Below the pieces are notes generated by a model, which was not told the DNA's origin, did no database searches, and saw only the letters and a list, made by a program, of their open reading frames with translations. Below, piece by piece: positions 1,196-4,920 of a stretch of DNA of 64,000 nt (position 1 is the first letter of the stretch; each line of letters begins with the position of its first letter). The stretch is from Vitrella brassicaformis CCMP3155 (Eukaryota; Protista; Chromerida), in the NCBI GenBank assembly GCA_001179505.1, contig CDMY01000462.1:7852-71851 (forward strand). Direction: 5' to 3'. The translations under genes were made by a program, and so were the position numbers.

Positions 1196-4100
1196 CTAGC
1201 CCTTTTCCTCCTTCTTGACGAAGGGCAGCGGCATCTGCTGCAGGGCGCTGGGGTTGTCGAGGTTGCGCAGCACCGCCGACACGGCCGAGAGGGTCGACTC
1301 GAGCACCTCCAGACGCTTGCACTGCAGAGAGGGGTCGGCCGCTGCTCCTGCTGCTGCTGCTGGTGCTGATGCTGCTGATGTGGCAAATGGCGCTGTGGGA
1401 GTGGGGGTGGTGGTATCGGGACGGGAGACCTGCTTGGACAGCCACCCGCAAAAGTCATCCTGAACATACGCAGCGACGAAACACTCCTTCTAATGCCTTT
1501 CTCCTTTGTCTTGAGTGGGCTCTATCTGTCTGTCTGTCTTATCACTGACCAAGAAGTCAGATCTCTGCTGGCCGACGTCGCCCCCACCCCCAGGAACGGC
1601 AGATGCAGCAACGCTGCTGCTTGACGTCGCCTTTTGCGGCGGCCCGTCCACCGGATACCCTCCCACAATGGTCGACCCGACTCGCGCATCTCTCGGCTGC
1701 GAGTAGCTGAAAGGTGGCGCGCTGGTCGGCAGCATGAACGGCGCAGGGGCGCGGTCAGCCGATGACGCCTTCCTCGCCCCCTGCTGGTCCAGCAGCACCG
1801 TCTCGTCGTCGAGCTCCTCGATCTCGACATTGCCAGAGTTGCGGCTCTCTGTCTGGAGGTCCGGGCTGCCGGCCTCGCCGCCCAACAGGCCGTCGAAAGG
1901 CGCGTCGGCCCCGCCCCCGAAGAGACTCATGGTGGGCGGCCCCACCCCGTCGGCCCCGTTGGTGTCGTCGTTGCTCTTGATGAACCCCTCCGCCACGTGG
2001 ATCATGTCCTCGGTGTCGGCATTGAGGAAGGGCGGAGAGGGAGATGGCGCGCGGAGGCCGGGCGCGGGCGTGTGGGTGTGGGGGTGGGGGAAGAGGCTGC
2101 TGGGTGCGGGGTGCGGGTGGGGGGGAGGGGGAGGGGCGAAGGGGGCCACTGATGGGAAATGTGGGGGATGGGGTTGGGGGTTAGTGAAGGCGTCCATGGT
2201 CGAGTAGGACGGCTCTGTGGGCGATTCCTGACGCATTGGCGGCATTGGCGGCGGCGGTGTGTCGTAGCCTGCCTTCTTGATGGACTCGCGCAGCATTTGG
2301 ATCTCCAGATTCTGATCAACACGACACAGCAGAGCTTTTGGCGGTTGCTTCCCTGCATGTCTAGAGAGTCACCTTGAGATGGAGCTCTTTCTCTTTGGCC
2401 TCCAGCAGCTGCTCCTTCTCGTGCAGCGACGCACTGATCGATGCCGACAAACACACAAACAAACGAGCCACTTGCTGTGCCATATGTCATATGCCGCTGT
2501 ATCGTCTTCTCTTCTTTCTCACCGGAGCGGCCCGATGGCCTCGAGCGCCTCCTTTCTCCGCCGCTGCTCGCGACGAGACAACTCACGGTTCCGACGAATG
2601 CTGACAGGTACACGCACGACATCAGCATTCGTGTCGGTTGCTGTGTGTGTGGGCGTAGGGGAGGGTGGGGTGACCTACCGAATGCACGCTCTGCAGTCGC
2701 ACTCCTCTGACCCGTTGTGCGGGCACTTGCGGCTGCTGCCCCCGCCACCACCCCCGCCACCACCACCGCTCCGACGGCGCTTGGACGAGTCGTCCAGAGA
2801 GATGTCCTGTGTGCACGTTGGTTGGGTACACGGAACGTACGTATGGGGTACACAAGGCGTCGTTTCTGTGTGTGTGCGTGCGTGTGTGTGTGTGCGTGTC
2901 GCCCACCGGGATGTCGGCGACGGCGCGCTTCTTGGGCTTGATGAGAGGAGAACCTGGTAAGGACAATACACGGCGAGTGGATGGATGGATGGATGGAGTT
3001 CCTACACACACCGACACTGACCTGAGCACTGTCTGAGCCACTCGGCCAGCTGGCCGTGTGACGTCAACTTCTGCATAACGTGCCAAATCCTGTGACTGAG
3101 GCACACACACACACACACACATCCATCCATCCATCCGTCCGCACATTAGCCACCTCCTCACTCCCACTCACCTGTCGTTCTTGGCGATTTCTGGCCCTCC
3201 ATAGAAGGCAAGCACGTGTGTGACGGTGTTGTCGCTGTAGCTGCGGATGGGCACGCCCAGCACCGTCGTGATGCCCAGTTTGGACGCCATCTTGAAACGC
3301 AGAAACGGCTTTCCATTCTGTTTGTTCAAAGGGGCATGGAGGAAGCACAACGAAGTGAAGTCATCACACGGCCCGCTTTCGCTGAGTGGTGGGTGAGGTA
3401 CCCTCTGACCTGGTGGCTCATCTGCAGGTTATCGGTGAACTCTGGCTGACAGGTCGCCAACACACGGCCGGGCATGCCCTGATGGATGGATATATAAAGA
3501 GTGGATGAGTTAGGGGGATGGATGGCTGTATGCGTGTGTGGTGCTGTCTTGTCTTGTTCAGTCGCTGACCTCTCCCCGCTTGAAGACGAACCCGCTGCTC
3601 TCGAGCATCCACGACACCAACTCAGGACGAGTCTCATAGTGAAACCTGCAGGCAGCACCAACCAAAGCACGAGCTCTCTCTGCTCCCCCTCTGTGGGTTT
3701 GTGTATGTGTGTGGGGGGGTGGGGGGTGGGGGGGTGTCGCCTTACTCTCTGACGTAGTGGAGGTCGTCTTGTATAACCTGCCAGGTGTCCATCGACCAGA
3801 AGCCCCCCTCGTTGCCCGCCTCCTTGAGCAGCCGCTGAACTATCTCCTTTATCTGATCAACCATTTCCCACACACACCATTCCTTCAGGCTCTCTGTGTG
3901 TGTGCGTCTGTGTCTACTGCCTGTCTGTGTGTAGGTAGTACCTGCTCGGCATCGAACGAAACGGGCACAGACCTGCACACACACACGACACAGAGGCGCC
4001 ACCTGTCTGTCTGCCAAGGCACTCCGATTCCTCATGTGTGTGAGTGTGGGTCGGTGTGTGCTGACTGACCTTGATATGGCTGTGGTGATGCTGCCGTCAT

Positions 4101-4692
4101 ACTGGCCGCCGCCCATGGGCTGTCCATACGGGTAGTTAGGCACCATGGCGTGGTGTTGCGACACGTGCGACGCATAAAACGACTCGTACAACTTCTCTAC
4201 CGCCACTGCAGTGCACACACATCACCACAGACACACACAGACGTGTGTGGCAGCAAGCGACGAACCCTCGCACCACTCCCCCTCTCATCCGGCTTACTTG
4301 GCAGTGTGTCGCCGTATAAGTGAGGGGCATTGGTCTGATACAGAGCATCTCTGCACCACACACACCACACACAAACACACAAACACACACACGCAGAAGA
4401 CAGGCAGACAGACCCCTTCTCGATAGTCTATCGTTCGTGTGTGCTCCACACATCCCTCGACGCACCTGAAGGCTTCAAAGGGAACATTGGCCGCCCCTCC
4501 GTGCACACCAGCAAGGCGCTCAAAAGCATCCTGAGCACACACAACACACAAGGCACACACAAGAGAGAGCAATGCCTCGTCAGCCTTCTTCGACACAATC
4601 AGCCGAGACACCGCGCCGCAGCAGTGCCGTGCTGCCCGCAGTGAGCTCACCTGTGCCAGAGCGGCCAGTCCGTTGTGCTGAGGTCCTGCCAT
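1196..4692 (-). CDS. GAF-domain + bZIP-like putative transcription factor (multi-exon)
   Basis: Hand-spliced exons join in frame from ATG 4692 (MAGPQHNG) to TAG 1196. GAF-like segment at about 3171-3835: FVFKRGE|GMPGRVLATCQPEF...PFLRFKMASKLGITTVLGVPI...VLAFY. NLS-like PKKR/KRRR. Basic region IRRNRELSRREQRRRKEALEA followed by heptads I-L-L-L-I-I (about 2270-2605). Pro-rich tail. Confidence 0.8.
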
Positions 4693-4920
4693 CGGCGAAA
4701 AACGCACCGGTGGCCTCCCAGCCTCCCAAGGGCAGCAACGAGACGCTCCACACACCTCTCAGAGCGGAAAAAGGGAAAGCGAAGGAACCGAAGGGAAAGG
4801 GCGCGCACTAGGAACTTCGCGTTAGTGCTCCCCGAAACCGCTGCTGCGACTGATCTGCGACGGCGTGCCGGACTGCCTCCCTCTCTGATCCATCATCCGC
4901 CCTCCTTCGCCGCACCGCTG

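What the first reader, a model, noticed from the sequence alone, without database searches (positions are those of the whole stretch)
2270..3835. GAF sensor domain fused to a bZIP-like DNA-binding domain
The spliced protein has a GAF-type segment (GEGMPGRVLATCQPEF...FLRFKMASKLGITTVLGVPI) resembling the GAF-related region of plant NIN-like proteins. Instead of RWP-RK it carries a basic region (RRNRELSRREQRRRKE) and an I-L-L-L-I-I zipper. In plant NLPs that region senses nitrate (established). A small-molecule-sensing bZIP would be an unusual one-component regulator in an alveolate, where AP2 factors dominate (inference). The canonical N-x7-R position is Q here, which suggests altered DNA specificity.
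Basis: partly seen in the sequence, partly recalled or inferred. Interest (0 to 1): 0.8.

Follow-up and report, generated by a model that had tools for sequence, protein, structure and literature searches.

The report
GAF-like domain fused to atypical bZIP
This is a real, expressed 16-exon gene of the alga Vitrella brassicaformis that joins a plant-NLP/MYC-type GAF-like regulatory domain to a cysteine-capped, non-canonical basic-leucine-zipper. I found this domain pairing only in this species, and neither DNA binding nor ligand sensing has been tested.

Summary
A minus-strand gene (CDS 4692..1196, 16 exons, all GT-AG) encodes 712 aa. Twelve of its 15 introns appear in spliced transcript contigs. 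The translation is identical to the public Vitrella brassicaformis protein CEM14964.1 / A0A0G4FM01, which UniRef names "BZIP domain-containing protein".

- **GAF-like domain (aa 105-265).** Pfam hits fall just below threshold (GAF_NLP 23.4 bits against a 24.1 cut-off, plus GAF_2 and bHLH-MYC_N). Language-model neighbours are GAF_NLP clusters (0.94). The ESM Atlas model matches GAF clusters at TM 0.73-0.76.
- **bZIP-like region (aa 325-385).** The register is exact: N329-x7-Q337-x9-I-L-L-L-I-I, predicted as one confident helix. However, Pfam gives no bZIP hit and CREB matches only at E about 2. Four of the five usual base-contact positions are non-canonical, and the zipper "a" positions are polar.
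- **Cys cluster.** A conserved C-P-H..C-D-C..C motif caps the basic region.
- **Relatives.** The only one found is a Vitrella paralog (CEM29697.1) that shares 10 intron positions and lies beside a glutamine synthetase gene. This scan had already reported the same architecture on that paralog.

Verdict: a new variant of known sensor-plus-dimeric-DNA-binder designs. Small-molecule or nitrate sensing is untested.

The parts
1196..4692 (-). Complete CDS of a 712-aa protein (Vitrella brassicaformis CEM14964.1 / A0A0G4FM01). The 16 exons are 4692-4651, 4530-4466, 4350-4298, 4205-4070, 3972-3942, 3852-3746, 3645-3570, 3478-3410, 3317-3172, 3095-3022, 2953-2907, 2806-2679, 2600-2523, 2433-2373, 2311-1550 and 1459-1196 (stop TAG at 1198-1196). 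Introns are 61-120 nt and all GT-AG.
   Evidence: Model built. Twelve introns appear in spliced contigs of runs X1/X2. The translation is identical to P0001. The public annotation gives the same 3497-nt span.
3026..3956 (-). GAF-like domain of the NLP/MYC_N type, aa 105-265 (exons 5-10). It carries the motif FVFKRGEGMPGRV...PEF...FLRFKMA.KLGITTVLGVPI.
   Evidence: Pfam on the domain slice gives GAF_NLP E 4.9e-5 (23.4 bits, cut-off 24.1), GAF_2 E 1.6e-4 and bHLH-MYC_N E 3.2e-4. ESM features score 0.94 to GAF_NLP clusters, and the Atlas model gives TM 0.73-0.76 to GAF clusters over residues 105-264. EGL1 N-terminal domain 7fdl matches at E 0.049. The core is 48% identical in the paralog.
2738..2936 (-). 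Basic, Gly-rich linker with NLS-like KPKKR (aa 273-277) and KRRRS (aa 291-295) and a Gly10 run (aa 296-305).
   Evidence: Read directly from the sequence. K275, R276 and R294 are conserved in the paralog. The NLS function is inferred.
2684..2725 (-). Conserved Cys/His cluster C310-P-H312-x-G-x-E-x-C318-D-C320-x-x-C323. It ends one residue before the basic region begins (R325) and six residues before N329.
   Evidence: C310, P311, H312, G314, E316, C318, D319, C320 and C323 are invariant between the two paralogs. No Pfam family matches. A metal or redox role is inferred only.
2552..2680 (-). Basic region, aa 325-341, RIRRNRELSRREQRRRK. It crosses the exon 12/13 intron. N329 is at 2590-2588 and Q337 at 2566-2564.
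   Evidence: It is nearly invariant in the paralog. phmmer aligns it to CREB 1dh3 in the canonical register at E 1.8-2.9. The nearest ESM feature clusters are bZIP_1/bZIP_2/bZIP_Maf at 0.88.
2270..2545 (-). Leucine zipper, aa 344-385 (exons 13-15). The d positions are I347, L354, L361, L368, I375 and I382. The a positions are R, E, E, N, R. A conserved G348-P349 follows the first d position.
   Evidence: Heptad table. AlphaFold2 predicts one continuous helix over aa 321-384 with pLDDT 82-94. Introns 2523/2433 and 2373/2311 are seen in RNA contigs.
1550..2266 (-). Pro-rich (aa 387-470, 30 Pro) then acidic (aa 471-560, net charge -14) low-complexity region, followed by the rest of exon 15 (to aa 625). 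This is a putative activation region.
   Evidence: Composition. No Pfam family matches. An RNA contig covers 1549-1950. The function is inferred.
1196..1459 (-). Last exon (aa 626-712), missed by a simple ORF reading. The transcript splices from 1550 to 1459 rather than reading on to the stop at 1490.
   Evidence: Loose-end sequence at 1549 in runs X1 and X2 matches 1459 downward. The resulting 712 aa equals P0001.

Best explanation
The locus encodes an expressed nuclear regulator of the chromerid alga Vitrella brassicaformis.

**Architecture, in order**
- A GAF-like domain of the kind found at the N-terminus of plant NLP and MYC/EGL3 transcription factors.
- A basic linker with NLS-like motifs.
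- A conserved Cys4/His cluster.
- A divergent basic-region leucine zipper.
- A Pro-rich and acidic tail.

**Most likely mechanism (inferred)**
- The long helix pairs through its six-heptad zipper. Because its 'a' positions are polar, it probably pairs with a partner bZIP or with the paralog.
- It places the basic region on DNA with a non-canonical specificity (N-LS-EQ instead of N-AA-SR).
- The GAF-like domain gates this activity by binding a ligand or a partner protein.
- The Cys cluster next to the basic region adds possible metal or redox control.

**Shown here**
- The gene structure and its expression.
- Identity with a public protein.
- The GAF-like character of aa 105-265.
- The bZIP register and the continuous helix.
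- Conservation of all these elements in one paralog.

**Inferred only**
- DNA binding, dimerisation, nuclear location and any sensing.
For: **Gene and expression**
- 16 GT-AG exons give one open frame.
- Twelve introns appear in spliced contigs of two runs.
- The protein is identical to CEM14964.1 / A0A0G4FM01.

**GAF-like domain**
- Three related Pfam families hit the same stretch co-linearly, just under threshold.
- ESM features score 0.94, with 179-183 shared features, to GAF_NLP clusters.
- The Atlas model gives TM 0.73-0.76 over about 150 residues to GAF-containing clusters, including a GAF_NLP cluster.
- Exon 9 alone also points to GAF clusters.
- EGL1 N-terminal domain matches at E 0.049, with FVF.GEG.PG aligned.

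**bZIP-like region**
- The spacing N-x7-Q-x9-I-x6-L-x6-L-x6-L-x6-I-x6-I is exact.
- CREB is the only transcription factor hit, and it aligns in that register.
- The nearest named ESM clusters are all bZIP families.
- AlphaFold2 predicts a single helix over 321-384 with pLDDT 82-94.
- UniRef names the protein a BZIP domain-containing protein.

**Conservation**
- In the paralog P0003 the GAF core, Cys cluster, basic region (including Q) and G-P are near-invariant.
- Ten intron positions and phases are shared.
Against: - No Pfam bZIP or HLH hit at E up to 10 for either paralog.
- PDB matches to bZIPs are not significant, and a two-sequence profile loses them.
- The paralog's region finds no bZIP at all.
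- The invariant R/K is Q.
- A Glu sits where bZIPs usually carry Ser/Cys, next to DNA.
- Charged 'a' positions (E358, E365) and a Pro in the first heptad would weaken a homodimeric zipper.
- The GAF_NLP score is 0.7 bits under Pfam's cut-off.
- The paralog's GAF region gets no Pfam hit, and the two-sequence profile finds nothing in PDB.
- My own AlphaFold2 models of the domain are low confidence (pLDDT 48-56). Their structural matches mix IclR ligand-binding domains, GAF, longin/roadblock and MYC/EGL3 at Z 6-9, which is no better than a common alpha/beta sandwich.
Confidence: 0.6

Rival explanations
1. The helix is a pairing module without DNA binding of its own. The protein would then act as a regulated partner or dominant-negative of canonical Vitrella bZIPs, as CHOP does among C/EBPs. 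The GAF-like domain would decide when it sequesters them.
For: Q replaces the invariant R/K, and Glu and Leu occupy base-contact positions. The 'a' positions are polar or acidic, which favours heterodimers. There is no Pfam bZIP hit. Other bZIP genes were noted in this genome by the scan (unchecked notes).
Against: The basic region is the most conserved stretch between the paralogs, at 16 of 17 residues, and keeps N and nine Arg/Lys. That argues for a selected nucleic-acid contact surface.
Confidence: 0.2
2. The GAF-like domain is a protein-docking platform, as in plant MYC2/MYC3 (JAZ, MED25) and EGL3 (MYB), and not a small-molecule sensor. Regulation would then come from a repressor or co-factor protein.
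For: bHLH-MYC_N scores almost as well as GAF_NLP (21.5 against 23.4 bits). The best PDB sequence hit is the EGL1/EGL3 MYB-binding domain. Among structural matches, MYC (8t2i) and EGL3 (7fdl) have the highest identity, at 16%. The NIT2 GAF is reported not to bind nitrate (PMC4620153).
Against: The nearest ESM feature and structure clusters are GAF_NLP and ligand-binding bacterial GAF domains. No JAZ-like or MYB partner is known in chromerids. Nothing tested here separates the two modes.
Confidence: 0.4
3. The basic-helical region is a degenerate bHLH rather than a bZIP. That would make the protein a MYC-like design (GAF-like N-domain plus bHLH).
For: From E336 the spacing E-x2-RR-x6-I-x2-LR-x2-L resembles bHLH helix 1 (my reading of the sequence). 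The N-terminal domain resembles bHLH-MYC_N.
Against: There is no loop and no recognisable helix 2. AlphaFold2 gives one unbroken helix over 321-384. Pfam HLH does not hit. ESM neighbours are bZIP families, not HLH. The heptad register fits a bZIP exactly.
Confidence: 0.05
4. The fusion is an annotation or assembly artefact that joins two separate genes.
For: Nothing beyond the general risk in draft eukaryotic genomes.
Against: One transcript contig joins exons 6-10, and others join exons 13-15 and 15-16. The paralog on another contig has the same domain order and 10 shared intron positions.
Confidence: 0.02

Closest known systems
Plant NIN-like proteins (NLP7) and Chlamydomonas NIT2
   Same: [quoted passage not shown] NIT2's RWP-RK lies within a leucine zipper (PMC4620153). 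The NLP7 N-terminal region binds nitrate (PMC13766177).
   Different: No RWP-RK and no PB1 domain is present. The DNA-binding part is bZIP-like. The lineage is an alveolate, not Archaeplastida. Nitrate binding is untested, and the NIT2 GAF is reported not to bind nitrate.
Plant MYC2/MYC3 and GL3/EGL3 (bHLH-MYC_N plus bHLH)
   Same: A GAF-like N-terminal domain with the FVF.GEG.PG motif sits upstream of a basic dimeric DNA-binding helix. The overall logic is a regulatory domain followed by a basic dimer module.
   Different: The DNA-binding module is not a bHLH (no loop or helix 2). No JAZ or MYB partners are known here.
Aureochromes (bZIP plus LOV) and PAS-bZIP factors of stramenopiles
   Same: They fuse a sensor-type alpha/beta domain to a bZIP in one polypeptide, making a one-component regulator in a plastid-bearing protist.
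   Different: The sensor there is LOV/PAS with a flavin and usually lies C-terminal to the bZIP. Here it is a GAF-like domain that lies N-terminal. No LOV or PAS Pfam hit was found.
Arabidopsis F-group bZIP19/bZIP23 zinc sensors (from my own knowledge)
   Same: A Cys/His-rich motif lies just N-terminal to the bZIP basic region.
   Different: The motif sequence is different. No homology was shown, and metal binding was not tested here.
Vitrella paralog CEM29697.1 / A0A0G4GIN2 (P0003)
   Same: It has the same order of GAF-like domain, Cys cluster, Q-type basic region and zipper. It is 48% identical over that region, and 10 intron positions and phases are shared.
   Different: It is 472 aa and lacks the long C-terminal tail and the intron at aa 350/351. 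It lies 1.7 kb downstream of a glutamine synthetase gene.

Membership tests
GAF domain superfamily (Pfam GAF, GAF_2, GAF_NLP, bHLH-MYC_N) | A profile match at or above the curated gathering score. | tested here: not met
   GAF_NLP scores 23.4 bits against a 24.1 cut-off on the domain slice, and 19.5 on the whole protein. GAF_2 scores 22.3 against 28.6, and bHLH-MYC_N 21.5 against 30.2. This is a near miss, with three related models hitting the same residues co-linearly.
GAF domain superfamily (Pfam GAF, GAF_2, GAF_NLP, bHLH-MYC_N) | A GAF-type alpha/beta fold. | tested here: met
   The ESM Atlas model of this protein gives TM 0.73-0.76 over residues 105-264 to clusters carrying GAF, GAF_2 or GAF_NLP. 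My own AlphaFold2 models are low confidence and give mixed GAF, IclR and longin matches at Z 6-9. The result therefore rests on the Atlas model.
NIN-like protein (NLP) family | [quoted passage not shown] | tested here: not met
   No RWP-RK or PB1 hit at E up to 10 on the full protein.
bZIP transcription factors | A basic-region signature N-x7-R/K with A/S-A and S/C at the base-contact positions. | tested here: not met
   N329 is present, but position +8 is Q337. The contact positions read L332, S333 and E336. The same holds in the paralog.
bZIP transcription factors | A heptad Leu repeat starting exactly 9 residues after the invariant basic residue, on one continuous helix. | tested here: met
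   I347, L354, L361, L368, I375 and I382 fall at N+18+7n. AlphaFold2 predicts a single helix over 321-384 with pLDDT 82-94.
bZIP transcription factors | A significant profile match (Pfam bZIP_1, bZIP_2 or bZIP_Maf). | tested here: not met
   No bZIP family appears at E up to 10. CREB 1dh3 matches only at E 1.8-2.9. ESM features reach 0.88 to bZIP clusters, which is a lead only. UniRef's name 'BZIP domain-containing protein' is an outside automatic annotation that I could not re-run.
bZIP transcription factors | Dimerisation and sequence-specific DNA binding. | not testable with these tools
   This needs EMSA, PBM or DAP-seq together with SEC-MALS.
bHLH (MYC-type) factors | A basic region followed by helix 1, a loop and helix 2. 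| tested here: not met
   No Pfam HLH hit. The helix is unbroken and has no loop.
Aureochrome / PAS-bZIP | A LOV or PAS sensor domain. | tested here: not met
   No PAS or LOV Pfam hit. LOV structures appear only as weak Foldseek matches to a low-confidence model.

The most novel reading that the evidence does not exclude
The GAF-like domain directly senses a nitrogen-status metabolite (nitrate, as in NLP7, or 2-oxoglutarate or glutamine) and switches a Cys-capped, Q-type bZIP with its own DNA specificity. That would make a one-component nutrient-sensing transcription factor in the closest photosynthetic relatives of Apicomplexa. It would also show that the NLP/MYC-type transcription-factor GAF module has been combined with three different DNA-binding domains (RWP-RK, bHLH, bZIP) across eukaryotes. 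The paralog's position next to glutamine synthetase would then be meaningful.
Probability: 0.12. Interest if true: 0.8.

Novelty: new variant of a known kind. Interest (0 to 1): 0.5.

Why it matters
Gene regulation in chromerids and apicomplexans is usually discussed in terms of ApiAP2 factors. A regulator that carries its own input domain would be a direct handle on how these algae couple environment to transcription.

The transcription-factor-type GAF domain (NLP, NIT2, MYC/EGL3) is generally treated as a plant and green-algal feature. Finding it in an alveolate joined to a third kind of DNA-binding module suggests it is an older, portable regulatory cassette.

The conserved Q-for-R basic region and the Cys cap are natural variants that could inform bZIP-DNA recognition rules.

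The protein is already in public databases. There it is annotated only as a bZIP-domain protein, without the GAF-like domain.

Tried and rejected
- **Pfam on single exons.** It found nothing, because the pieces are too short.
- **Word-indexed protein searches.** I tried region 100-400, the two-paralog profile, and the GAF region alone. They returned only the two Vitrella proteins. The poly-Gly and basic words probably swamped the candidate lists, and the last search missed even the paralog. These blanks are therefore weak evidence.
- **Exhaustive representative search.** It could only be run with the 48-aa exon 9. It found self, the paralog, and one spurious laminin-G repeat protein. Relatives below about 50% identity in that exon would be missed.
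- **Metagenome scans.** One scan by protein patterns and one by a degenerate exon-9 DNA pattern found nothing.
- **Two-sequence profiles against PDB.** Both the GAF and the bZIP profile lost the weak single-sequence hits.
- **AlphaFold2 with a two-sequence alignment.** It gave low-confidence GAF models, so the Foldseek and VIA results are not decisive.
- **bHLH reading.** Considered and rejected.
- **Gene-fusion artefact.** Rejected on RNA contigs and paralog structure.
- It skipped only simple repeats in introns (2859-3005, 3090-3147, 3691-3739).
Full report

Joining them at canonical GT-AG sites gives one open frame.

Spliced contigs from runs X1 and X2 were laid on 1450-4750. These runs are labelled 'RNA?', but their contigs lack the introns, whereas the DNA runs X3 and X5 are colinear with the genome. 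The contigs show the following.
- Junctions seen as listed joints (with the stated cut offsets): 4651/4530, 4298/4205, 4070/3972, 3942/3852, 3570/3478, 3410/3317, 2523/2433 and 2373/2311.
- Junctions inferred from adjacent contig pieces: 3746/3645 and 3172/3095.
- Junctions seen as loose ends: 3022/2953 and 1550/1459.
- The last one corrects a simple ORF reading. The transcript splices out of the long exon at 1550 into a final exon 1459-1196.

The resulting 16-exon CDS (4692..1196) encodes 712 aa. It is letter-for-letter identical to database protein P0001. P0001 is CEM14964.1 / UniRef100_A0A0G4FM01 of Vitrella brassicaformis CCMP3155, on contig CDMY01000462.1.

Three introns are not seen in the RNA contigs: 4465-4351, 2906-2807 and 2678-2601. 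The last two sit at positions and phases conserved in the paralog. An in-frame stop lies 23 codons upstream of the ATG with no ATG between them.

**2. The N-terminal domain**

Single exons were too short for Pfam. Once the database protein was available, residues 100-270 gave three co-linear matches just below threshold.

| Pfam family | E-value | Bits | Cut-off |
|---|---|---|---|
| GAF_NLP | 4.9e-5 | 23.4 | 24.1 |
| GAF_2 | 1.6e-4 | 22.3 | 28.6 |
| bHLH-MYC_N | 3.2e-4 | 21.5 | 30.2 |

Other lines of evidence point the same way.
- The best PDB sequence hit is the N-terminal MYB-binding domain of EGL1/EGL3 (7fdl, E 0.049). FVF.GEG.PG, F.R, A and TV..P are aligned.
- ESM language-model features place the segment next to plant GAF_NLP clusters (0.94, with 179-183 shared features).
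- The Atlas's own model of this protein superposes on GAF-containing clusters at TM 0.73-0.76 over residues 105-264. One of these is a GAF_NLP/RWP-RK cluster.
- Exon 9 alone also pointed to GAF.

My two AlphaFold2 runs had only two sequences in the alignment and are low confidence for this domain (pLDDT about 48-56).
- Their topology (helix, two strands, helix, three strands, helices) is GAF-like.
- Foldseek and VIA-align return IclR ligand-binding domains, GAF domains, longin/roadblock domains and MYC/EGL3 at Z 6-9. That is no better than a shared alpha/beta sandwich.
- A two-sequence profile finds nothing in PDB.
- The paralog's domain gets no Pfam hit.

I conclude that aa 105-265 is very probably (about 85%) a GAF-like domain of the transcription-factor type shared by NLP and MYC/EGL3. 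Formal Pfam membership is missed by a hair.

**3. The C-terminal DNA-binding-like part**

Residues 325-385 read RIRRNRELSRREQRRRKEALEAIGPLRASLHEKEQLLEAKEKELHLKNLEIQMLRESIKKA.

In favour of a bZIP:
- Counting from N329, position +8 is Q337.
- Positions +18, +25, +32, +39, +46 and +53 are I, L, L, L, I, I. That is exactly the bZIP spacing.
- AlphaFold2 makes 321-384 a single helix with pLDDT 82-94.
- phmmer's only transcription-factor hit in PDB is CREB (1dh3), aligned in precisely this register, though at E 1.8-2.9.
- The nearest named ESM clusters are all bZIP_1, bZIP_2 or bZIP_Maf, at 0.88. By the tool's own calibration that is a lead only.
- UniRef names the protein 'BZIP domain-containing protein'. 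I take this as an outside automatic annotation.

Against a bZIP:
- Pfam gives no bZIP or HLH hit at E up to 10 for either paralog.
- The two-sequence profile and the paralog alone find no bZIP in PDB.
- The zipper 'a' positions are R, E, E, N, R.
- A conserved Gly-Pro follows the first d residue.

It is therefore bZIP-like in plan. It is an outlier in sequence and was probably selected for a different DNA site or for heterodimerisation. A bHLH reading was considered because the N-domain resembles bHLH-MYC_N. It fails for lack of a loop and a second helix.

**4. Further conserved features**

Directly before the basic region lies C310-P-H-x-G-x-E-x-C-D-C-x-x-C323, invariant between the paralogs. 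No family matches it. A zinc or redox role is a hypothesis only. From my own knowledge, the Cys/His motif of plant bZIP19/23 zinc sensors is a functional parallel.

The linker carries KPKKR, KRRRS and a Gly10 run. The tail is Pro-rich and then strongly acidic.

**5. Relatives and distribution**

An exhaustive HMMER scan of 1.84 billion representatives with exon 9 found only this protein, a second Vitrella protein (P0003, 472 aa, CEM29697.1) and one spurious repeat protein.

Word-indexed searches and two metagenome scans added nothing. Because the exhaustive query was only 48 aa, relatives below roughly 50% identity would be missed. 'Vitrella only' therefore means 'none found', not 'none exist'.

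P0003 has the same architecture.
- It is 48% identical over the GAF-to-zipper region.
- It shares 10 of its 11 intron positions and phases with this gene, which carries one extra intron at aa 350/351. The pair is therefore an old duplication of an already fused gene.
- P0003 lies 1.7 kb downstream of a glutamine synthetase gene.
- This gene's neighbours are unrelated to nitrogen assimilation: a 389-aa protein placed head-to-head 228 bp away, a CRT-like protein and a GCV_T protein.

A full-text search found no paper using 'GAF-bZIP' or 'bZIP-GAF'. This scan had already followed up the paralog and reached the same reading (s1-080125). I re-checked its exon count and the glutamine synthetase adjacency myself.

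**6. Mechanism and comparison**

What it works like:
- A regulatory-domain-plus-dimeric-basic-helix transcription factor.
- Its logic is closest to MYC/EGL3 (GAF-like plus bHLH) and to NLP/NIT2 (GAF plus RWP-RK with a zipper).
- Its 'sensor fused to bZIP' aspect is closest to aureochromes and PAS-bZIPs.

What it is not:
- It is not an NLP, because it has no RWP-RK or PB1 domain.
- It is not a bHLH.
- It is not an aureochrome.
- It fails two of four testable bZIP criteria while meeting the geometric one.

Whether the GAF-like domain binds a small molecule is open.
- The NLP7 N-terminal region binds nitrate (PMC13766177).
- The NIT2 GAF reportedly does not (PMC4620153).
- MYC/EGL3 domains bind proteins.

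I put about 60% on 'regulated, dimeric, DNA-binding factor with non-canonical specificity'. I put about 20% on 'non-DNA-binding partner of other bZIPs'. Within either reading, ligand and protein-partner control are about even. Nitrate or nitrogen sensing specifically gets about 12%.

**7. Verdict**

The sensing claim is unproven, and the bZIP claim is supported by geometry more than by statistics.

It is a new variant of known designs. It is already present in databases but is under-annotated there. Interest is moderate (0.5).

Noticed in passing
L001:1-1324 and L001:3001-5381: The paralog (P0003) lies 1.7 kb downstream of a glutamine synthetase gene (Gln-synt_N/C) on the same strand. This is suggestive given the NLP-type GAF domain, but adjacency is the only link. 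The gene in this window has no such neighbour.
   Followed up: partly
window 4693-4920: Only 228 bp separate the start codon of this gene (4692, minus strand) from the start of a divergently oriented 389-aa gene (4921 onward, plus strand). An RNA contig shows this gene's 5' UTR reaching at least 4750. This looks like a compact bidirectional promoter.
   Followed up: partly
window 2528-2533 and 2434-2522: This gene has an extra intron at aa 350/351, right after the conserved G-P-L of the first zipper heptad. The paralog lacks it. All 10 other alignable intron positions are shared.
   Followed up: yes
window 2859-3005, 3090-3147, 3484-3530, 3691-3739: The introns are short and uniform (61-120 nt). 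They are filled with simple repeats such as (CA)n, (GGAT)n/(CCAT)n and C/G runs. The reads tool skipped several of them as repeats.
   Followed up: no
window 1199-1459: The last exon encodes an Ala/Ser/Pro-rich stretch followed by an amphipathic segment (LQCKRLEVLESTLSAVSAVLRNL). The shorter paralog has neither, and no family matches. It could be a second interaction or export helix.
   Followed up: no
window 1490-1549: If the 1549 donor were skipped, the reading frame would run on 19 codons to a stop at 1490. That would give a 644-aa isoform without the last exon. The contigs show only the spliced form.
   Followed up: partly
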